NCBI RefSeq assembly: GCF_002571385.2
Contig: NW_019217892.1
Span: forward strand, 384,156 to 448,155
Direction: 5' to 3'
From: Stylophora pistillata
Taxonomy: Eukaryota
Length of the DNA: 64,000 bases
Shown here: positions 32,149-38,100 of the stretch, piece after piece
Position numbering within the stretch: position 1 is the stretch's first letter
Layout: every line of letters begins with the position of its first letter
Notes under the pieces: model-generated
What the model was told of the DNA's origin: nothing
The model's database searches: none
Seen by the model: only the letters and a program-made list of their open reading frames with translations
Position numbers and translations under genes: made by a program

Positions 32149-35100
32149 GCAAATGGAGGAATTGTGGGTTGTGTGTGGGTTTATATGCATAAAACGGAGC
32201 TAAGTTATGAGCTTGGAAAAGAAATAGAGAAAGATGTTTTTTGTCTTGTAAAGAGCATGGGACAAAGAAAAAACTCCGAGTTCCCACAAGGAATCGAACT
32301 ACAGACCTTTGGATTCTGCACTGTGAAGCTCTACTACTGAGCCAAAGAGACTCCATGGTGAGCAAGGCCCATTAGGAAGTTCATATATTACATGTGTCCT
32401 GCACACTTCCAGCAAAAAAAGTATAGGCTGGGAAACAGCTTGTGCGCTAACAAAGACATTACCCAAACCCAATCTGATTCTATTTCAGTGTTTGACAGCA
32501 TTAAGACCATGGAGAAATCTGGTTGCTAAAGGAGTAGCTGAAAGTATCGGCCCTGAGAGATCCTTCTACTCATGGCTCAACTTTGTCTTCAACAGGTAAA
32601 TGATGAGGGCTAAAAGAGCCAATAACTTTTCAGCTTTTAAAAATATGTTTTCGGTGTTATTTTTCATACACTTAGGAATACTGCAATAACCACTGTGGGA
32701 GTTTGTGTGTTTGTTCATTGTCAACAATGTCAGTAATATAAATATTGGTAGGAGACACAGTTGGTGTCAAAAGTGATAGATATTGAAATTAATGCTTACA
32801 ATCAGGAAACCACCCAAGTGAGATTTGTGCCCAATAATATTTTAATCATTGAAGGAAGAAATGCATTAAAATCATCTCTATGTGCTATATTATTTCAATG
32901 TTTTAGTATATACTAAGGCATCTATTCACCTCAGTGTCAGTGGTAAGGGATGGAAATTCACCTTGTGGCTTTGTCGTTAGGTGAATATCCGCTACTACCC
33001 ACCTCCTTTTTAGTGAATAGTTAATTATTTGGGTCATATTTTCGGTATGGTATATGATAAGATTACTTCTGTATGGTCAATGCATTTACTAACAGTTTAT
33101 AATACTTAGATAAAATGACACATACAATGGTTAACATCAAATGGTTGGTGAGTGATCTTGTCCAGTCCACTGTCCAAGGTCACTTTCATCTATCAGACCT
33201 TTACCAATTATGCAAGAAATGATACTCTGTAATTTTGTAATCTTTCAGAGTTGATGAAGAGCGTATTAAAGAATTTGGAGCAGACAGGTACTATAATCAA
33301 TAAAATCCAGCTACTGACTCCATTTTGTGGGTCTGAACTTGGAACAAATCCTCCTTGCAAAGTTGACTCCAGGATTATTATCCTTTAGTTAGTAAGAAAA
33401 TCTATAATTTAGAGCAGCTCAAGAGTAACAGAAATTCATTTTGTTTGAGTTGTTGTAAACTTTGTATTAGATGAAAAAATGTTTATTCTGCTGAAAATAC
33501 TTGACATATTTGGTTCAAATTCCCCAACCCACCCAGGCAAGGTTCAAATTACCCACCCCCTATTAATGGACAATTGCCAAATGCCTTTCTTTCTTTATCT
33601 ATTTGAGTGAATGTTTTCCCTTCACATGACATTTTATTTTTAAAGATTGTAATGACTGGTTTTTTCTTAAAGGAAAATCTTAATCTAATTCTTATCTTAA
33701 TTTGACTGCCTCCCGGTTAGCTCAATTGGTTAGAGCGCCGGATTGTGTTGCACGGGAGGTTGAGGGTTCGAGCCCTGGCCGAACCAATACTCATGGTNNN
33801 NNNNTGAGCTTCTCTGCGACCATCTCAGCTTTGCTGTGTTGTCAATCAATAGAGTACCTCGCCAAGGGATGCTGCCCATGTGCCAAGCAGCATTGTCATC
33901 GTAGGTGCAGCCCCACAGTTAAACTGTGGATATACCCGTGTTCAGGCTATAGGCATATATATATATTAATTTAAGAATATTCTCTCTTGCACTGTGTTAG
34001 TAGACTTCTTTATGGTATTTACCAACAGTACAAGACTAACTTGAAAAAAACCCACTAAAAGAAGGCACCCATTTACAGTACTTACAAACAGTACAAAACC
34101 CCACCAAAAGAGGGCAGCTATTTTTATGGTATTACACAGTAACAACATGTTGCAAGTTATTAACACTTACATTATCAACTTACGAAGCTAGTACTCCTTT
34201 GTTCAACAAAGCAGGGTTCCAACTCAATGAACCATAGATTACAATTCTGGGACACGTGTAATCTTTCTTTCAATGTCTTGTAGTAGATTGTTCACCTTTC
34301 GTGCTGGTATAACATTTATAAAGTTAAAAGGTGAATGTGTGGAAGATAAGGCATAGTGAAGTTTAAATACGAGTTTAATCAGTGGTGTTATCAATTTCAA
34401 AACCATCTGGAGAAAAAAAGTATTTGCCTGCATGTAAATTTTTTCCATGAAAGTTCTTTCATTTTCTTCAAATATCTCTTGTTTGTGTATCTCTTTGACA
34501 ACACCAAGAACCACTATCTGACCCTTGATCCTTCGCATCACTGGGCCACCTGAGCAACCAGGCCTGAGTGAGCAATGTAATGTCACTAGTGGCTCTTTAT
34601 AGAATTCTTTCTTGTACCCAGACACCTTGCCATCTACAAATAGCGCTGTTTCCCCCATATGGGTAGGTGGGTAGCCAAAACAGAAAACTGACTGGCCTAT
34701 TAATAAGTCTAAACAACTCAACTTAAATGGAAAAATTCCGGTGTCCTTAAAATTAAGCTTAGGACAGTGAAGTAAAGCTAAATCATTTTTAAAATCAACA
34801 TAAACATCTTTAGAGGGCAGTTGGTGAATGGCTTCATTAGAAATGAATACTCCGTACTTCTCCTTATCATTGAGATATTTTCGGAGCACATGTTCATTGG
34901 TAATAATTAAACCATCGCCGATGAGAAATCCAGTTCCATATGAAATCGTTGTTAGTTTTTTGGCCTCTTCATATTCCGTCAGAATGCCACCCCTTTCATC
35001 GTCAACGTTCTTTCTCTTTTCGGCATCGCCTTGTCCCGGTTTTGGGTATCTGTCAATCAGCTTTTTTTCATCAAACTCATCAATAGCAGACTTAATGTCA

Positions 35101-38100
35101 AAAATACTGAAGGTAGCCTCTCGGCTATTTCGTACATTAGGAAAGATATCAGTATCTTCTTTTAGAGTACCTGCAAAACAGTCTCTTACTCGACGTTCAG
35201 CCTCACTGCGAAAATATTCACGTTCTTTCGCGTCTTCGTATTCTTTCGTTAATTCAATCCACTTTTGGTCGATTGCATCCTTTAATTCTTTAGATCCATC
35301 CCCTTCATCGTCTGGATATTTGAGGAGTCGTCCTTCGTTATCAATCGCTTTAACGGCATTTAAAATGTCAGTGATAGTGTACCTCTCTCCTACCTTGTGT
35401 TTCAGAAGCCCCATATCACCGGCAAAGTTCCCAGCGAAGCAATCTCTCACTCTTCGCTGCGCTACAATCCAAGAATATTCGCGCTGTCCATTAGGGTCAA
35501 CTTTGGCTTCCTCCATCTCTCTGGAGACATCAGCTCTTCGTTTGTTGATCGTCGCATTCACTTGTTTTATTCCGGGGCCCTCCTCATTTCGGTACTTTTC
35601 AACGTACTTAACCTCGTCAAAATTAAGAAGCGCTTGATGAATTATATGGATGTCATATCTTTTCATCATCGAAATGTTATGTTTATTACGAACATCATAA
35701 AGCTTGAGAGGATCGAAAAGAATCCACGAGTCAAACCCGCGCGGAAAGGGACCCCCATAACAACCCCGCAATCGTATGAGAGCAGTCTTTCGATCGTATT
35801 CCTGAAGTTCTGCAAATCTGCAGATCTGGACCTTGACACAGGCATTCAAAGCTTTTCTGCCGTCGTCGCCCAGTACATCTTCGCTGTCCATGGTTTAATT
35901 TTCCGGATCTTACGTAAATTTTACTGAATCGGAATCTCTGGTATATACAAAGGCTCATAGTTTCACTTTCACTGCAAGAGCTAGGCCTGAGTTCGACAGC
36001 CGGACATGTGACTATGTGCACGTCACGTGATGTTAAGCCGCCTCGTCCCAGGCTATCCCGAAGCTGCGTTAAAAAGAAGGCATGCACAAATGAATCGATG
36101 TTACCCAGTTGCGTGCCAACTTCAGGCGGAAACTGTTAAGGAAAACGTGAGTTGTCACGCAAATAATAAAATTACGAAGAGAAATGGGAAAGGTCAATGG
36201 ATATCGGTAAAACGGTATTCAGCTGGTTATTTGCCTATTCGTTGTGAACTTTACCAAAAAAGCTATAGACTTTTCTAAAGGCCCGTTTTCGACACGCTTT
36301 AAACATTTCTTACGTTTTCAGCAATGTTGGACGACCTGTTCAAACGCACCGAACATTTGGTTCAACAATTCGTGTTGAATACATATTGAAGCAAATGTTG
36401 AAACCATTCAAACGGCCCTTAACAATGTGACCTTGAAATTCCGACCTTAATCGAACAAAACGGGCATACGTTGAATGGTTACCTTCTCTACTAGAAAATT
36501 ACCTCTGCTTTATTTTATTATGATTATTGAGAGCCAGTTCCTTTGTAAATTATCCAGAATCTGGACGTCAAATAATAATGACATCATTAGAAAGGAATTT
36601 TTTTTTGCTAGACACGGAAGTCAGTTCATTTTACATTTATCTCAGACGTCATGGATTTTCTGTAACTCCAAACACTAGTAGGCCCACGTTTTCAAGATTT
36701 GTACATTTGATGTTTGCATTAAACAGATAAGAAATTTTCTATTTAAGATTTGTAATGCCTGTAAAGGTAGATGTTTTCATAAATCCTTTCCTTTCCAGTC
36801 AACTAAAAAGTGCCATTTCATTTAAAAACTCAAAGTTTTGATTTTAATTATTAATTTGCCACAAACATTACGAGCAAGTAATGTCAAATCTGTCATTAAC
36901 TGAAGAAAAGAAATAAGCAATGTAGTGAGGAAGTTTAATTGGACCAACAGAAGCCAGAAGCTTAATGTGTATTTTAACTTACAGTAATGTGAGTTTAGCT
37001 GATAACTTTCTCATGGAAATACTTAAAATGAACAAGAGTGTACAATTTTTGCTCTTTAAGGGTAGCAGCTGAATGGATACTACGTTGTGGAGGAACTGTC
37101 AAATTTAAGAATTTTGAAAAGTGGATCCAGAATTATAATGCCATACCAGATGGACCCAAAGGGAAGTTTTCCCTGGAAGCAATTAGTGCCAAAGGAATAA
37201 GTGTAACCACTGGTGGTCTTCAGCACCTTGGTATTACTTGTACATCAATCCAGCCCCTTTAATTTTTTAACACTTTTATTTAACCCTTTGACCCATGAGA
37301 GTGATTAGCATCTAATTTCTCTCTAAAATATCAACCTCAAATCACATTAAGGTCAGTTCTTGATTGTTAAAAAAAATTGTTTTGTAAGTACCCTAGGAAA
37401 TGAACATAGGAACAGCATTGAGAATATGCATACTGATGTAAGGGTGTAAAAGCTAGAGGCCATTGTTGTCACAGTTTTTCCTAGTTTTGGTAACATGAAG
37501 CTACCAGGAGTAATAAGCTGCTCTCTCTGATAAGGGTTTTCAGTCTTTTGCAGGCTACTCGTAGCAGTTTGTCTAGCTTCCTCAACAGTTTGCTGGTACC
37601 CATTTGTACTTCTAAAAGGGCTGGAAAACTGTGAGAATGAAGTGTTTTTCTCAATAATACAACAAAATGATCTTACCAGGTCTGAAGTGCAGACCTCAGG
37701 CTCCACCATGTTTCCCAATATTTTCCTTTGTTAAAATTACAATAAAGATATTGACATGAAATAACTATTAGTGTCAGGCTTCTTTTTTTCACCCTCTTTT
37801 CATTGCCTCTTCTTTTATGGCCCCTTCCCCAATTCTTCCTTAATTTTCTAGTCTGTGATATCAATTTCCTTTCTTGAGAGCATGCATTTCAATCATCATC
37901 ACAATGTGCATCTCATTACCTTCTTTCAGATGGACTGCAGCACCTAAGACATCTGAATGTAAACAGCTGTGTGTATGTAACCAACATACAAAAACTTCTT
38001 CCTGTGAAAGGAAGTTTGGAGGAGCTGGACATCGGAAACTGTGTTGCATTATCAGATATATCACCACTCTTTGAATTTAAGTAAGTGAAGAAGGATTAGC

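What the first reader, a model, noticed from the sequence alone, without database searches (positions are those of the whole stretch)
34959..35850. The repeats appear inserted inside the protease fold (loop LA), not fused in front of it
Seen: both proteins begin with a conserved A[LF]NACV[KR]V.[IV] before repeat 1, and GTGF follows directly after repeat 3. Established: in HtrA/Trypsin_2 domains an 'xxSVVxI' first strand precedes G[ST]GF, joined by the regulatory loop LA. Inference: ~290 aa of repeats replace loop LA and are placed to occlude or allosterically gate the active site. Domain scanners would miss this topology.
Basis: inference. Interest (0 to 1): 0.75.

Follow-up and report, generated by a model that had tools for sequence, protein, structure and literature searches.

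The report
Repeat array nested inside coral protease
Two neighbouring stony-coral genes encode a cutting enzyme of the HtrA type whose first structural strand is separated from the rest of the enzyme by three copies of a previously undescribed ~90-residue module, an unusual built-in insertion at a loop that regulates activity in related enzymes.

Summary
Two intronless minus-strand ORFs (p1 34239-35891, 550 aa; p2 39601-41307, 568 aa; 51% identical) start with ALNACVKVQI / AFNACVRVKV, carry three ~90-aa repeats, then GTGF and a Trypsin_2 domain.

The topology reading is supported by prediction and comparison, not by experiment.
- **Full model:** AlphaFold2 (pLDDT 85.1) gives helix 8-17 and strand 18-25, the helical array, then strand 314-325.
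- **Superposition:** HtrA1, DegS and DegP align at Z 23-24.5. All 50 listed alignments start at model residue 1-12 and end at 541-546.
- **Array alone:** it folds without residues 1-25 (pTM 0.85) and matches no solved fold (best Z 3.8 of 48,161 chains).
- **Family:** in 128 of 129 complete members, 1 to 5 repeats lie between the same two conserved elements. One natural form has no repeats but keeps the N-terminal strand.
- **Conservation:** residues 5-25 are the most conserved part of the protein.

I saw only alignment ranges, not coordinates. Occlusion or gating of the active site is untested. PolyA RNA contigs cover the gene unspliced. The scan had noted this gene pair before, on this same window (s1-775552). 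This is a new variant of a known kind.

The parts
34239..35891 (-). p1: intronless ORF, 550 aa, HtrA-fold serine protease with a nested repeat array
   Evidence: ORF. Pfam Trypsin_2 scores 67.7 bits at 319-460. AF2 model pLDDT 85.1. PolyA RNA-seq contigs of 2542-2957 nt cover window 34100-36100 colinearly with no joints.
35817..35879 (-). p1 residues 5-25: conserved N-terminal helix (8-17) and strand (18-25), read as the HtrA N-terminal helix plus first barrel strand
   Evidence: DSSP of the model. All 50 listed VIA alignments to HtrA-family chains start at model residue 1-12. Lowest column entropy of the protein, 0.96 bits.
35502..35804 (-). p1 repeat 1 (residues 30-130)
   Evidence: Repeat HMM. 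Helical with a small two-strand bridge.
35226..35483 (-). p1 repeat 2 (residues 137-222)
   Evidence: Repeat HMM; models.
34959..35225 (-). p1 repeat 3 (residues 223-311)
   Evidence: Repeat HMM; models.
34482..34952 (-). p1 residues 314-470: strand 314-325 carrying GTGF (319-322) and the two-barrel protease core with H334, D370 and S447
   Evidence: Pfam. Foldseek to Deg1, Deg2, DegP and HtrA1 at E about 1e-10. VIA Z up to 24.5. Triad residues present in 71, 76 and 75 of 80 aligned sequences.
34332..34472 (-). p1 residues 474-520: second, helical insertion between strand 458-468 and strand 524-529 (loop L2 region by position), lower confidence
   Evidence: DSSP H476-488 and H495-518, pLDDT blocks 58-71. 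Highest column entropy, 2.00 bits. The assignment to L2 is my inference from strand order.
34245..34331 (-). p1 residues 521-549: last barrel strand (524-529) and C-terminal helix (530-549)
   Evidence: VIA alignments end at model residue 541-546 and at the end of the solved protease domains.
39601..41307 (-). p2: paralogous intronless ORF, 568 aa, same architecture (N-terminal motif at 14-23, repeats at 34-317, Trypsin_2 at 325-467)

Best explanation
p1 and p2 are tandem, intronless genes of a stony coral. p1 is covered by polyA RNA contigs. Both encode cytosolic-looking serine proteases (no signal peptide by eye) with an HtrA/Deg-type chymotrypsin fold.

The fold is interrupted. The N-terminal helix and first barrel strand (residues 5-25) are followed by a rigid array of three ~90-residue, mostly helical repeats of an undescribed fold (26-313). 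Only then comes the second strand (GTGF, 314-325) and the rest of the two barrels. So the array sits where HtrA proteases have regulatory loop LA. It is a nested insertion, not an N-terminal fusion.

The family lacks PDZ domains and varies the array from 0 to 5 copies between two fixed anchor elements.

Inferred, not shown: the array is the regulatory or recognition module of the enzyme. It would take over the roles that loop LA (shielding the active centre, linking oligomers) and the PDZ domains (ligand sensing) play in DegP-type enzymes. I put the nested topology at about 0.8 and active-site gating in particular at about 0.35.
For: **Shown by tools**
- Anatomy of both ORFs and their repeats.
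- AF2 model with pLDDT 85.1 and pTM 0.68: H8-17, E18-25, then E314-325. pLDDT is 88-89 over residues 11-30 and 86 over 311-320.
- Foldseek top hits are all Deg/HtrA.
- VIA-align: HtrA1 3nzi_A Z 24.5, rmsd 2.4 A, 196 of 211 residues aligned, model 1..543 against chain 166..370. HtrA1 8se7_F: 192 of 197 aligned. DegS 3lgi_C: 201 aligned. All 50 listed rows start at model residue 1-12, with consistent registers.
- Residues 312-475 plus 519-545 number only 191. An alignment of 199-201 residues therefore needs residues from outside that span.
- The array alone folds at pLDDT 88.8 and pTM 0.85 without residues 1-25, and keeps the same small internal bridges. The 8-residue strand 18-25 is therefore not a partner that repeat 1 needs.
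- In 128 of 129 complete family proteins the order is N-terminal motif, then 1 to 5 repeats, then the GSGF core. The insert length is 33-558 aa.
- The natural repeat-less P0219 (289 aa) aligns to p1 1-57 and 301-550, so it keeps the strand.
- Residues 5-25 are the most conserved region.

**From the literature**
- DegP loop LA is residues 38-79. It shields the active centre and contacts L1 and L2 of the opposite trimer (PMC4339722, passages).
Against: - I could not see coordinates, contacts or PAE. The tools gave only the first and last aligned residue, so pairing of strand 18-25 with strand 314-325 is inferred, not read off.
- AF2 models are predictions from an 80-sequence alignment of one family.
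- A 28-column HMM of the N-terminal segment found only an insignificant match (RKAAPAVV, E 0.56). The match was at the right place, but in only 1 of 2 bacterial DegP-like proteins tested.
- pTM falls from 0.85 (array alone) to 0.68 (whole protein), so the placement of the array relative to the active site is less certain.
- No oligomer model and no activity data exist.
- 14 family proteins have the core but no N-terminal motif. 13 of them start in or at the edge of a repeat within their first 12 residues, and one has an unrelated start.
Confidence: 0.75

Rival explanations
1. The N-terminal segment is an independent conserved motif (a cap of repeat 1, or a targeting, modification or degradation signal). 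In that case the repeats are an ordinary N-terminal fusion to a protease whose barrel is complete from GTGF onward.
For: - Pfam Trypsin_2 and several defence-protease profiles start at or a few residues before GTGF (LmuA profile position 13 and Avs1b position 19 align to residues 315-318). Some Trypsin_2 proteases may therefore have little in front of this strand.
- Sequence similarity of the segment to the HtrA first strand is not significant.
- I saw only alignment ranges.
Against: - The model gives an 8-residue strand at 18-25. The repeats contain only 2-3-residue bridges, and these pair with each other even when residues 1-25 are absent.
- All 50 HtrA-family alignments begin at residue 1-12 in consistent register and cover up to 192 of 197 target residues, including the targets' own N-terminal helix and strand.
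- The motif stays N-terminal whatever the repeat number, and it survives in the repeat-less P0219.
Confidence: 0.12
2. The nested topology is right, but the array is not an active-site gate. It is a substrate- or partner-binding platform or an oligomerisation scaffold that replaces the missing PDZ domains.
For: - No PDZ or other domain is detected, and the protein ends with the protease's C-terminal helix.
- The array is a rigid body (pTM 0.85).
- Repeat number varies from 1 to 5 across paralogues, as in binding arrays.
- In DegP the LA loops also link trimers (PMC4339722).
Against: No partner is known. The fold has no solved relative to suggest a ligand. The same data fit gating equally well.
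Confidence: 0.35
3. The genes are decaying or non-functional duplicates, and the architecture has no functional meaning.
For: - Some paralogues elsewhere in the genome carry stop codons (C49:646235-647245, C49:656894-657904 and C49:648848-649648).
- The family is lineage-restricted: 70 hits among 1.84 billion representatives.
Against: - Both ORFs are intact over 550 and 568 codons.
- Relatives 75-79% identical keep the full length in other corals.
- The catalytic triad is kept in 71, 76 and 75 of 80 sequences.
- PolyA RNA-seq contigs of transcript size cover p1 in 4 of 4 runs from 2 studies.
Confidence: 0.03

Closest known systems
HtrA/DegP/DegS/Deg (MEROPS S1C-type) serine proteases
   Same: - Two-barrel chymotrypsin fold with an N-terminal helix and first strand. 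VIA Z 22.6-24.5 at rmsd 2.2-3.0 A over 181-201 residues; Foldseek E about 1e-10.
- His-Asp-Ser triad.
- A variable element between the first and second strand, which is loop LA (42 residues, regulatory and inhibitory in E. coli DegP; PMC4339722).
   Different: - No PDZ domain.
- The Do-family profile TIGR02037 scores only 25.2 and 19.9 bits against a cut-off of 416.2.
- The LA position holds a folded 288-residue array of three repeats instead of a loop.
- There is a second, helical insertion near loop L2.
- No signal peptide by eye.
- The nearest bacterial 'serine protease Do' relatives are only 30% identical, at E about 4e-4.
Bacterial defence-system Trypsin_2 protease effectors (PADLOC RT-Protease_XI, LmuA, Avs1b)
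   Same: The protease core matches these profiles about as well as it matches Pfam Trypsin_2: RT-Protease_XI 1.2e-16, LmuA 3.6e-12, Avs1b 2.2e-05. These are cytosolic proteases joined to other modules.
   Different: No reverse transcriptase, Lamassu or STAND NTPase part is present. The partner module here is nested inside the fold rather than attached at one end. The host is an animal.
FAM111A/B (vertebrate intracellular Trypsin_2 proteases)
   Same: Intracellular Trypsin_2-type protease with non-catalytic modules N-terminal to the core. Modelling puts S1C enzymes as its closest structural relatives (PMC9798293, passages).
   Different: FAM111 has UBL domains in front of the protease (same paper). 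I saw no sequence link: FAM111 was absent from my PDB sequence hits at E up to 1, but I did not test it directly.
Viral NS3 proteases completed by a cofactor strand (HCV NS4A, flavivirus NS2B). Recalled, not from any call.
   Same: A strand that is remote from the protease core (there, in another polypeptide) completes the N-terminal barrel of a chymotrypsin-fold protease.
   Different: There the strand is supplied in trans by a cofactor. Here it is in the same chain, separated by a nested domain array. This is an analogy only.

Membership tests
Pfam PF13365 Trypsin_2 | Score above the family's gathering cut-off (27.6 bits) | tested here: met
   67.7 bits (p1, 319-460) and 57.8 bits (p2, 325-467).
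HtrA/DegP (Do) family | HtrA-type chymotrypsin fold of the protease domain | tested here: met
   On the predicted model only: VIA Z 24.5 to HtrA1 3nzi_A. All 50 listed rows are HtrA/Deg-type proteases or unnamed serine proteases aligned in the same way. Foldseek results.
HtrA/DegP (Do) family | Catalytic His-Asp-Ser triad | tested here: met
   H334, D370 and S447 in p1, present in 71, 76 and 75 of 80 aligned sequences.
HtrA/DegP (Do) family | One or more C-terminal PDZ domains | tested here: not met
   Pfam finds no PDZ at E up to 1. The model ends with the protease's C-terminal helix at 530-549.
HtrA/DegP (Do) family | Family profile TIGR02037 above its cut-off (416.2 bits) | tested here: not met
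   25.2 bits (p1) and 19.9 bits (p2).
HtrA/DegP (Do) family | Trimer-based oligomers with regulatory loops LA, L1, L2, L3 and LD | not testable with these tools
   No multimer prediction and no coordinates were available. Only the position of the LA-equivalent insertion was inferred.
Bacterial defence protease effectors (RT-Protease_XI, LmuA, Avs1b) | Protease joined to the system's own RT, Lamassu or STAND NTPase module | tested here: not met
   Only the protease part of those profiles matches (profile positions 346-489 of 510, 13-176 of 425 and 19-111 of 1924). No such domains appear in Pfam.
FAM111 | N-terminal UBL domains plus a C-terminal Trypsin_2 domain, with orthology to vertebrate FAM111A/B | not tested
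   I only read passages of PMC9798293. No direct comparison was run.

The most novel reading that the evidence does not exclude
The nested array is a sensor that keeps an innate-immune effector protease switched off. Binding of a pathogen-derived factor to the repeats, or cleavage within them, would leave the first strand held in the barrel but free the LA-position block, so the protease fires. That would be a one-chain tripwire. The variation in repeat number (0 to 5) and the tandem gene clusters would then reflect an arms race. It would be a new way of regulating an HtrA-fold enzyme and a new coral immune module with a new protein fold.
Probability: 0.12. Interest if true: 0.85.

Novelty: new variant of a known kind. 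Interest (0 to 1): 0.62.

Why it matters
HtrA-fold proteases are normally regulated by short loops (LA, L1-L3, LD) and by C-terminal PDZ domains. Here a lineage-restricted family has no PDZ domain. Instead it has a folded, copy-number-variable repeat array nested between the first two strands of the catalytic barrel.

- **Annotation.** If the topology is confirmed, it shows that this fold tolerates a ~290-residue (up to ~560-residue) structured insertion at LA. Linear domain annotation cannot report this; Pfam sees only residues 319-460.
- **Fold.** The repeat has no sequence or structural relative in the libraries searched, so it is a candidate new fold.
- **Experiments.** The family has natural 0-, 1-, 3-, 4- and 5-repeat forms. 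That is a ready-made series for testing how an LA-position insert controls an HtrA-type active site.
- **Biology.** The family is expanded in tandem clusters in stony corals, and p1 is covered by polyA RNA contigs. Its protease core resembles effector proteases of bacterial immune systems. Together these make a role in coral stress or immune proteolysis worth testing.

Tried and rejected
- **Naming the repeats (no result).** Pfam at E up to 1 found nothing. The ESM Atlas feature search of residues 132-315 gave no usable hit. HMMER of residues 1-316 against 1.84 billion representatives gave 70 hits, and the 8 whose sequences I read were all members of the same family. Foldseek against PDB gave 0 hits at E<=0.001. 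VIA-align against 48,161 chains gave 0 at Z>=5.
- **Sequence homology of the N-terminal segment to the HtrA first strand (not significant).** A 28-column HMM was run against two bacterial DegP-like ORFs found on small contigs of the same assembly. I did not build a deep HtrA profile for a profile-profile test.
- **ISRE-like element upstream of p1 (weak).** GAAAGTGAAACT lies at 35959-35970. It is 1 of 2 matches in the window, 0.55 are expected by chance, and 10 of 100 shuffles reach 2 matches. It is absent from the 400 bases upstream of p2. This is not evidence by itself.
- **Repeat-skipping transcript (none seen).** I looked for a spliced isoform that could explain P0219. No joints appear in the contigs of 4 of 4 RNA runs. 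Contigs drop rare variants, so absence is not shown.
- **Literature (nothing found).** Four searches found no description of this family or of a domain nested in loop LA. PMC10236652 holds none of 'trypsin', 'serine protease', 'peptidase' or 'intronless'. PMC3723955 mentions only a kallikrein-like protease and intronless GiMAP genes. The library lacks most subscription journals. I did not ask for supplementary files, and gene-family tables in coral genome papers could list this family.
- **Not possible.** I could not check the contigs of P0219 or of the 14 proteins that lack the N-terminal motif.

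
Full report
**What is there.**
The window is ORF-poor and about 38% G+C. It carries exon-like pieces of ordinary animal genes: NRDE-2, an M14 carboxypeptidase and a fucose pyrophosphorylase. Its genome (G000) is 398 Mb in 5,513 contigs. The closest named relatives of the proteins studied here come from the stony corals Pocillopora damicornis, P. verrucosa and Oculina patagonica.

Two long ORFs lie 3.7 kb apart on the minus strand. p1 is 34239-35891 (550 aa) and p2 is 39601-41307 (568 aa); they are 51% identical. Pfam reports one domain in each, Trypsin_2, at 319-460 and 325-467.

**The observation.**
- p1 residues 14-23 read ALNACVKVQI and p2 residues 14-23 read AFNACVRVKV.
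- An HMM built from p1's own repeats places three repeats at 30-130, 137-222 and 223-311 in p1, and at 34-133, 141-225 and 230-317 in p2.
- GTGF follows at p1 319-322.
- The finding's coordinates correspond to residues 14-311.

**The family.**
- A word-index search with p1 gave 477 proteins at E<=0.001, of which the best 120 were listed.
- An exhaustive HMMER search with residues 1-316 gave only 70 proteins among 1.84 billion representatives. The 8 whose sequences I read were all members or fragments of the same family.
- The genome itself holds 21 matches: 2 in this window, 14 on contig C49 between about 618 and 685 kb, 3 on C1351 and 2 on C404. Some carry stop codons.
- I had 228 proteins in hand: 226 fetched plus p1 and p2. 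Of these, 129 have the N-terminal motif within the first 60 residues, the GSGF core and the serine motif.
- In 128 of those 129 the order is N-terminal motif, then repeats, then core. Repeat counts are 1 (10 proteins), 3 (70), 4 (29) and 5 (19). The distance from motif to core is 33-558 residues, median 297.
- The one exception, P0219 (289 aa; 3 member sequences on 6 contigs), has no repeat. It aligns to p1 1-57 and to p1 301-550. It is a natural array-less form that keeps the N-terminal element.
- Seventeen proteins have the core but no N-terminal motif. Three are bacterial Do-type proteases. Of the 14 family members, 13 begin in or at the edge of a repeat within their first 12 residues and one has an unrelated start. 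They look like truncated gene calls.
- Residues 5-25 are the most conserved region of the protein. Mean column entropy is 0.96 bits there, 1.37-1.50 in the barrels and 1.63-1.86 in the repeats.

**The fold.**
AlphaFold2 on an 80-sequence alignment gave mean pLDDT 85.1 and pTM 0.68. In order along the chain the model has:
- helix 8-17 and strand 18-25;
- three mostly helical repeats, each with a small two-residue bridge;
- strand 314-325 (carrying GTGF) and the remaining strands of two barrels;
- a lower-confidence helical pair at 476-518;
- strand 524-529 and a C-terminal helix at 530-549.

Foldseek's best PDB matches are Deg2, Deg1, Deg9, DegP, HtrA1 and DegS, at E about 1e-10.

VIA-align on Foldseek's list gave Z 22.6-24.5 for the 50 entries shown.
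- HtrA1 3nzi_A: Z 24.5, rmsd 2.4 A, 196 of 211 residues aligned, model 1..543 against chain 166..370.
- HtrA1 8se7_F: 192 of 197 aligned.
- DegS 3lgi_C: 201 aligned, model 1..544 against chain 42..252.
- DegP 3otp_F: 191 aligned, model 2..544 against chain 11..258.

All 50 rows start at model residue 1-12 and end at 541-546.

The start points are in register between independent chains of one protein. Deg2 gives 110<->10 and 112<->12. DegP gives 11<->2 in four entries and 12<->3 in a fifth.

Nearly every residue of the short HtrA1 chains is aligned, and those chains begin with their own N-terminal helix and first strand. The model must therefore supply equivalents ahead of GTGF. Residues 312-475 plus 519-545 number only 191, fewer than the 199-201 aligned to DegS.

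With the DegP register (model = DegP minus 9, assuming no gap in that stretch), loop LA of DegP would begin at model residue 29. LA is residues 38-79 according to PMC4339722 (passages). Repeat 1 begins at 30.

I saw only ranges, not coordinates, so the strand pairing itself is inferred.

The array alone (residues 26-313, 51-sequence alignment) folds at pLDDT 88.8 and pTM 0.85. It keeps the same small internal bridges as in the full model. Repeat 1 therefore does not need residues 1-25. The only long strand available to pair with the 8-residue strand 18-25 is in the protease. This argues against the refutation condition, though again without contact lists.

**What the array is.**
It has no Pfam family and no Atlas lead. 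It has no Foldseek match at E<=0.001; the best is 0.82. No VIA match reaches Z>=5 among 48,161 PDB representatives; the best is Z 3.8 over 65 residues. That is below what the tool reports as typical even for models without a clear match. Each repeat keeps an R-x-R-D-C-[FY]-A-G helix, a Y-x-I-x-D-I strand-helix and a K-Y-P...long-helix segment. On present evidence it is an undescribed module.

**What the protease is.**
- The triad H334, D370, S447 is present in 71, 76 and 75 of 80 sequences.
- By sequence it is a distant Trypsin_2 member, not a Do-family member. TIGR02037 scores 25.2 bits against a cut-off of 416.2, and MarP scores 36.3 against 250.
- PDB sequence hits are weak: RsgI9 2.9e-4, SplB 1.4e-3, HtrA1 2.1e-3.
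- The nearest non-family proteins are bacterial 'serine protease Do' at 30% identity and E about 4e-4.
- Profiles of bacterial defence-system proteases match the core about as well as Pfam does: RT-Protease_XI 1.2e-16, LmuA 3.6e-12.
- There is no PDZ domain.

**Expression.**
Seven polyA RNA-seq runs from two studies hold 87-93% of the sampled words of 34100-36100. In 4 of 4 runs laid, contigs cover the stretch colinearly with 0-8 differences, no indels and no joints. Three of the runs do so with single contigs of 2,542-2,957 nt. This fits an unspliced mRNA. The tool warns that contigs in an RNA library do not prove transcription and hide rare isoforms.

**How it most likely works.**

*Shown:* the linear anatomy, the family-wide invariance of the two anchor elements around a variable array, the HtrA-type predicted fold, and the intact triad.

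*Inferred with good support (about 0.8):* the array is nested between the first and second strand, at the LA position.

*Inferred by analogy only (about 0.35):* the array shields or gates the active site. LA does this in resting DegP, where it contacts L1 and L2 and also links trimers (PMC4339722). A recognition or scaffold role that replaces the missing PDZ domains is equally compatible with the data.

The boldest reading not excluded is a one-chain sensor and effector whose array is a tripwire. I put it at about 0.12.

**Novelty.**
Four full-text searches and look-ups in four papers turned up no description of this family or of a folded domain array in loop LA. The protease kind is known. 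The nested, copy-variable array and the repeat module are new as far as I could search. Earlier notes of this scan on the same window (s1-775552, s1-775644) had flagged the gene pair and an upstream ISRE-like element. I found the element, but it is statistically weak and absent upstream of p2.

Noticed in passing
window 34332-34472 (p1 residues 474-520): A second insertion in the protease: two helices (476-488, 495-518) between the penultimate and last strands of the C-terminal barrel, which is the loop L2 region by strand order. pLDDT is 58-71 and this is the most variable region of the family.
   Followed up: partly
window 35959-35970 (minus strand), 68-79 bases upstream of the p1 ATG: An ISRE-like GAAAGTGAAACT with a TATA-like tatatac about 20 bases downstream. 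The window has 2 matches against 0.55 expected, and 10 of 100 shuffles reach 2. There is no such match in the 400 bases upstream of p2.
   Followed up: partly
protein P0219 (289 aa; no locus fetched): A natural repeat-less family member. It aligns to p1 1-57 and 301-550, so about 250 residues of the array are missing while the N-terminal strand is kept. It has 3 member sequences on 6 contigs. I could not tell whether it is a genomic deletion, a pseudogene or a spliced isoform.
   Followed up: partly
proteins P0179, P0183, P0173 (no loci fetched): One-repeat members in which the rest of the LA-position insert is a long acidic, Ser/Asp-rich, low-complexity stretch instead of further repeats.
   Followed up: no
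G000:C49 about 618,000-685,000 (L005, L006, L007, L009): A tandem cluster with 14 matches to p1. It includes intact frames of 684-739 aa and copies with 1 to 10 in-frame stops, so the family shows both expansion and decay in this genome.
   Followed up: no
L001 (G000:C2372:5143-8443) and L002 (G000:C4432:1-1245): Intronless bacterial-type DegP/Do genes with a signal peptide and PDZ region (441.9 bits, over the TIGR02037 cut-off) on small contigs. L001 also has a pseudouridine-synthase-like ORF beside the gene. These are probably bacterial contigs in the coral assembly.
   Followed up: no
p1 C18, C44, C151, C238 (window 35838-35840, 35760-35762, 35439-35441, 35178-35180): One nearly invariant cysteine sits in the first strand and one in the R-D-C-[FY]-A-G helix of every repeat. 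This could be a redox or metal feature. E. coli DegP also has a regulatory disulfide inside LA (PMC4339722).
   Followed up: no
window 553-5481 (minus), 10512-11210 (plus), 55087-55656 (minus): Exon-like ORFs of ordinary genes flank the protease pair: NRDE-2 (139.6 and 43.9 bits), M14 zinc carboxypeptidase and a fucose pyrophosphorylase domain. The two intronless genes therefore sit among intron-containing host genes.
   Followed up: no
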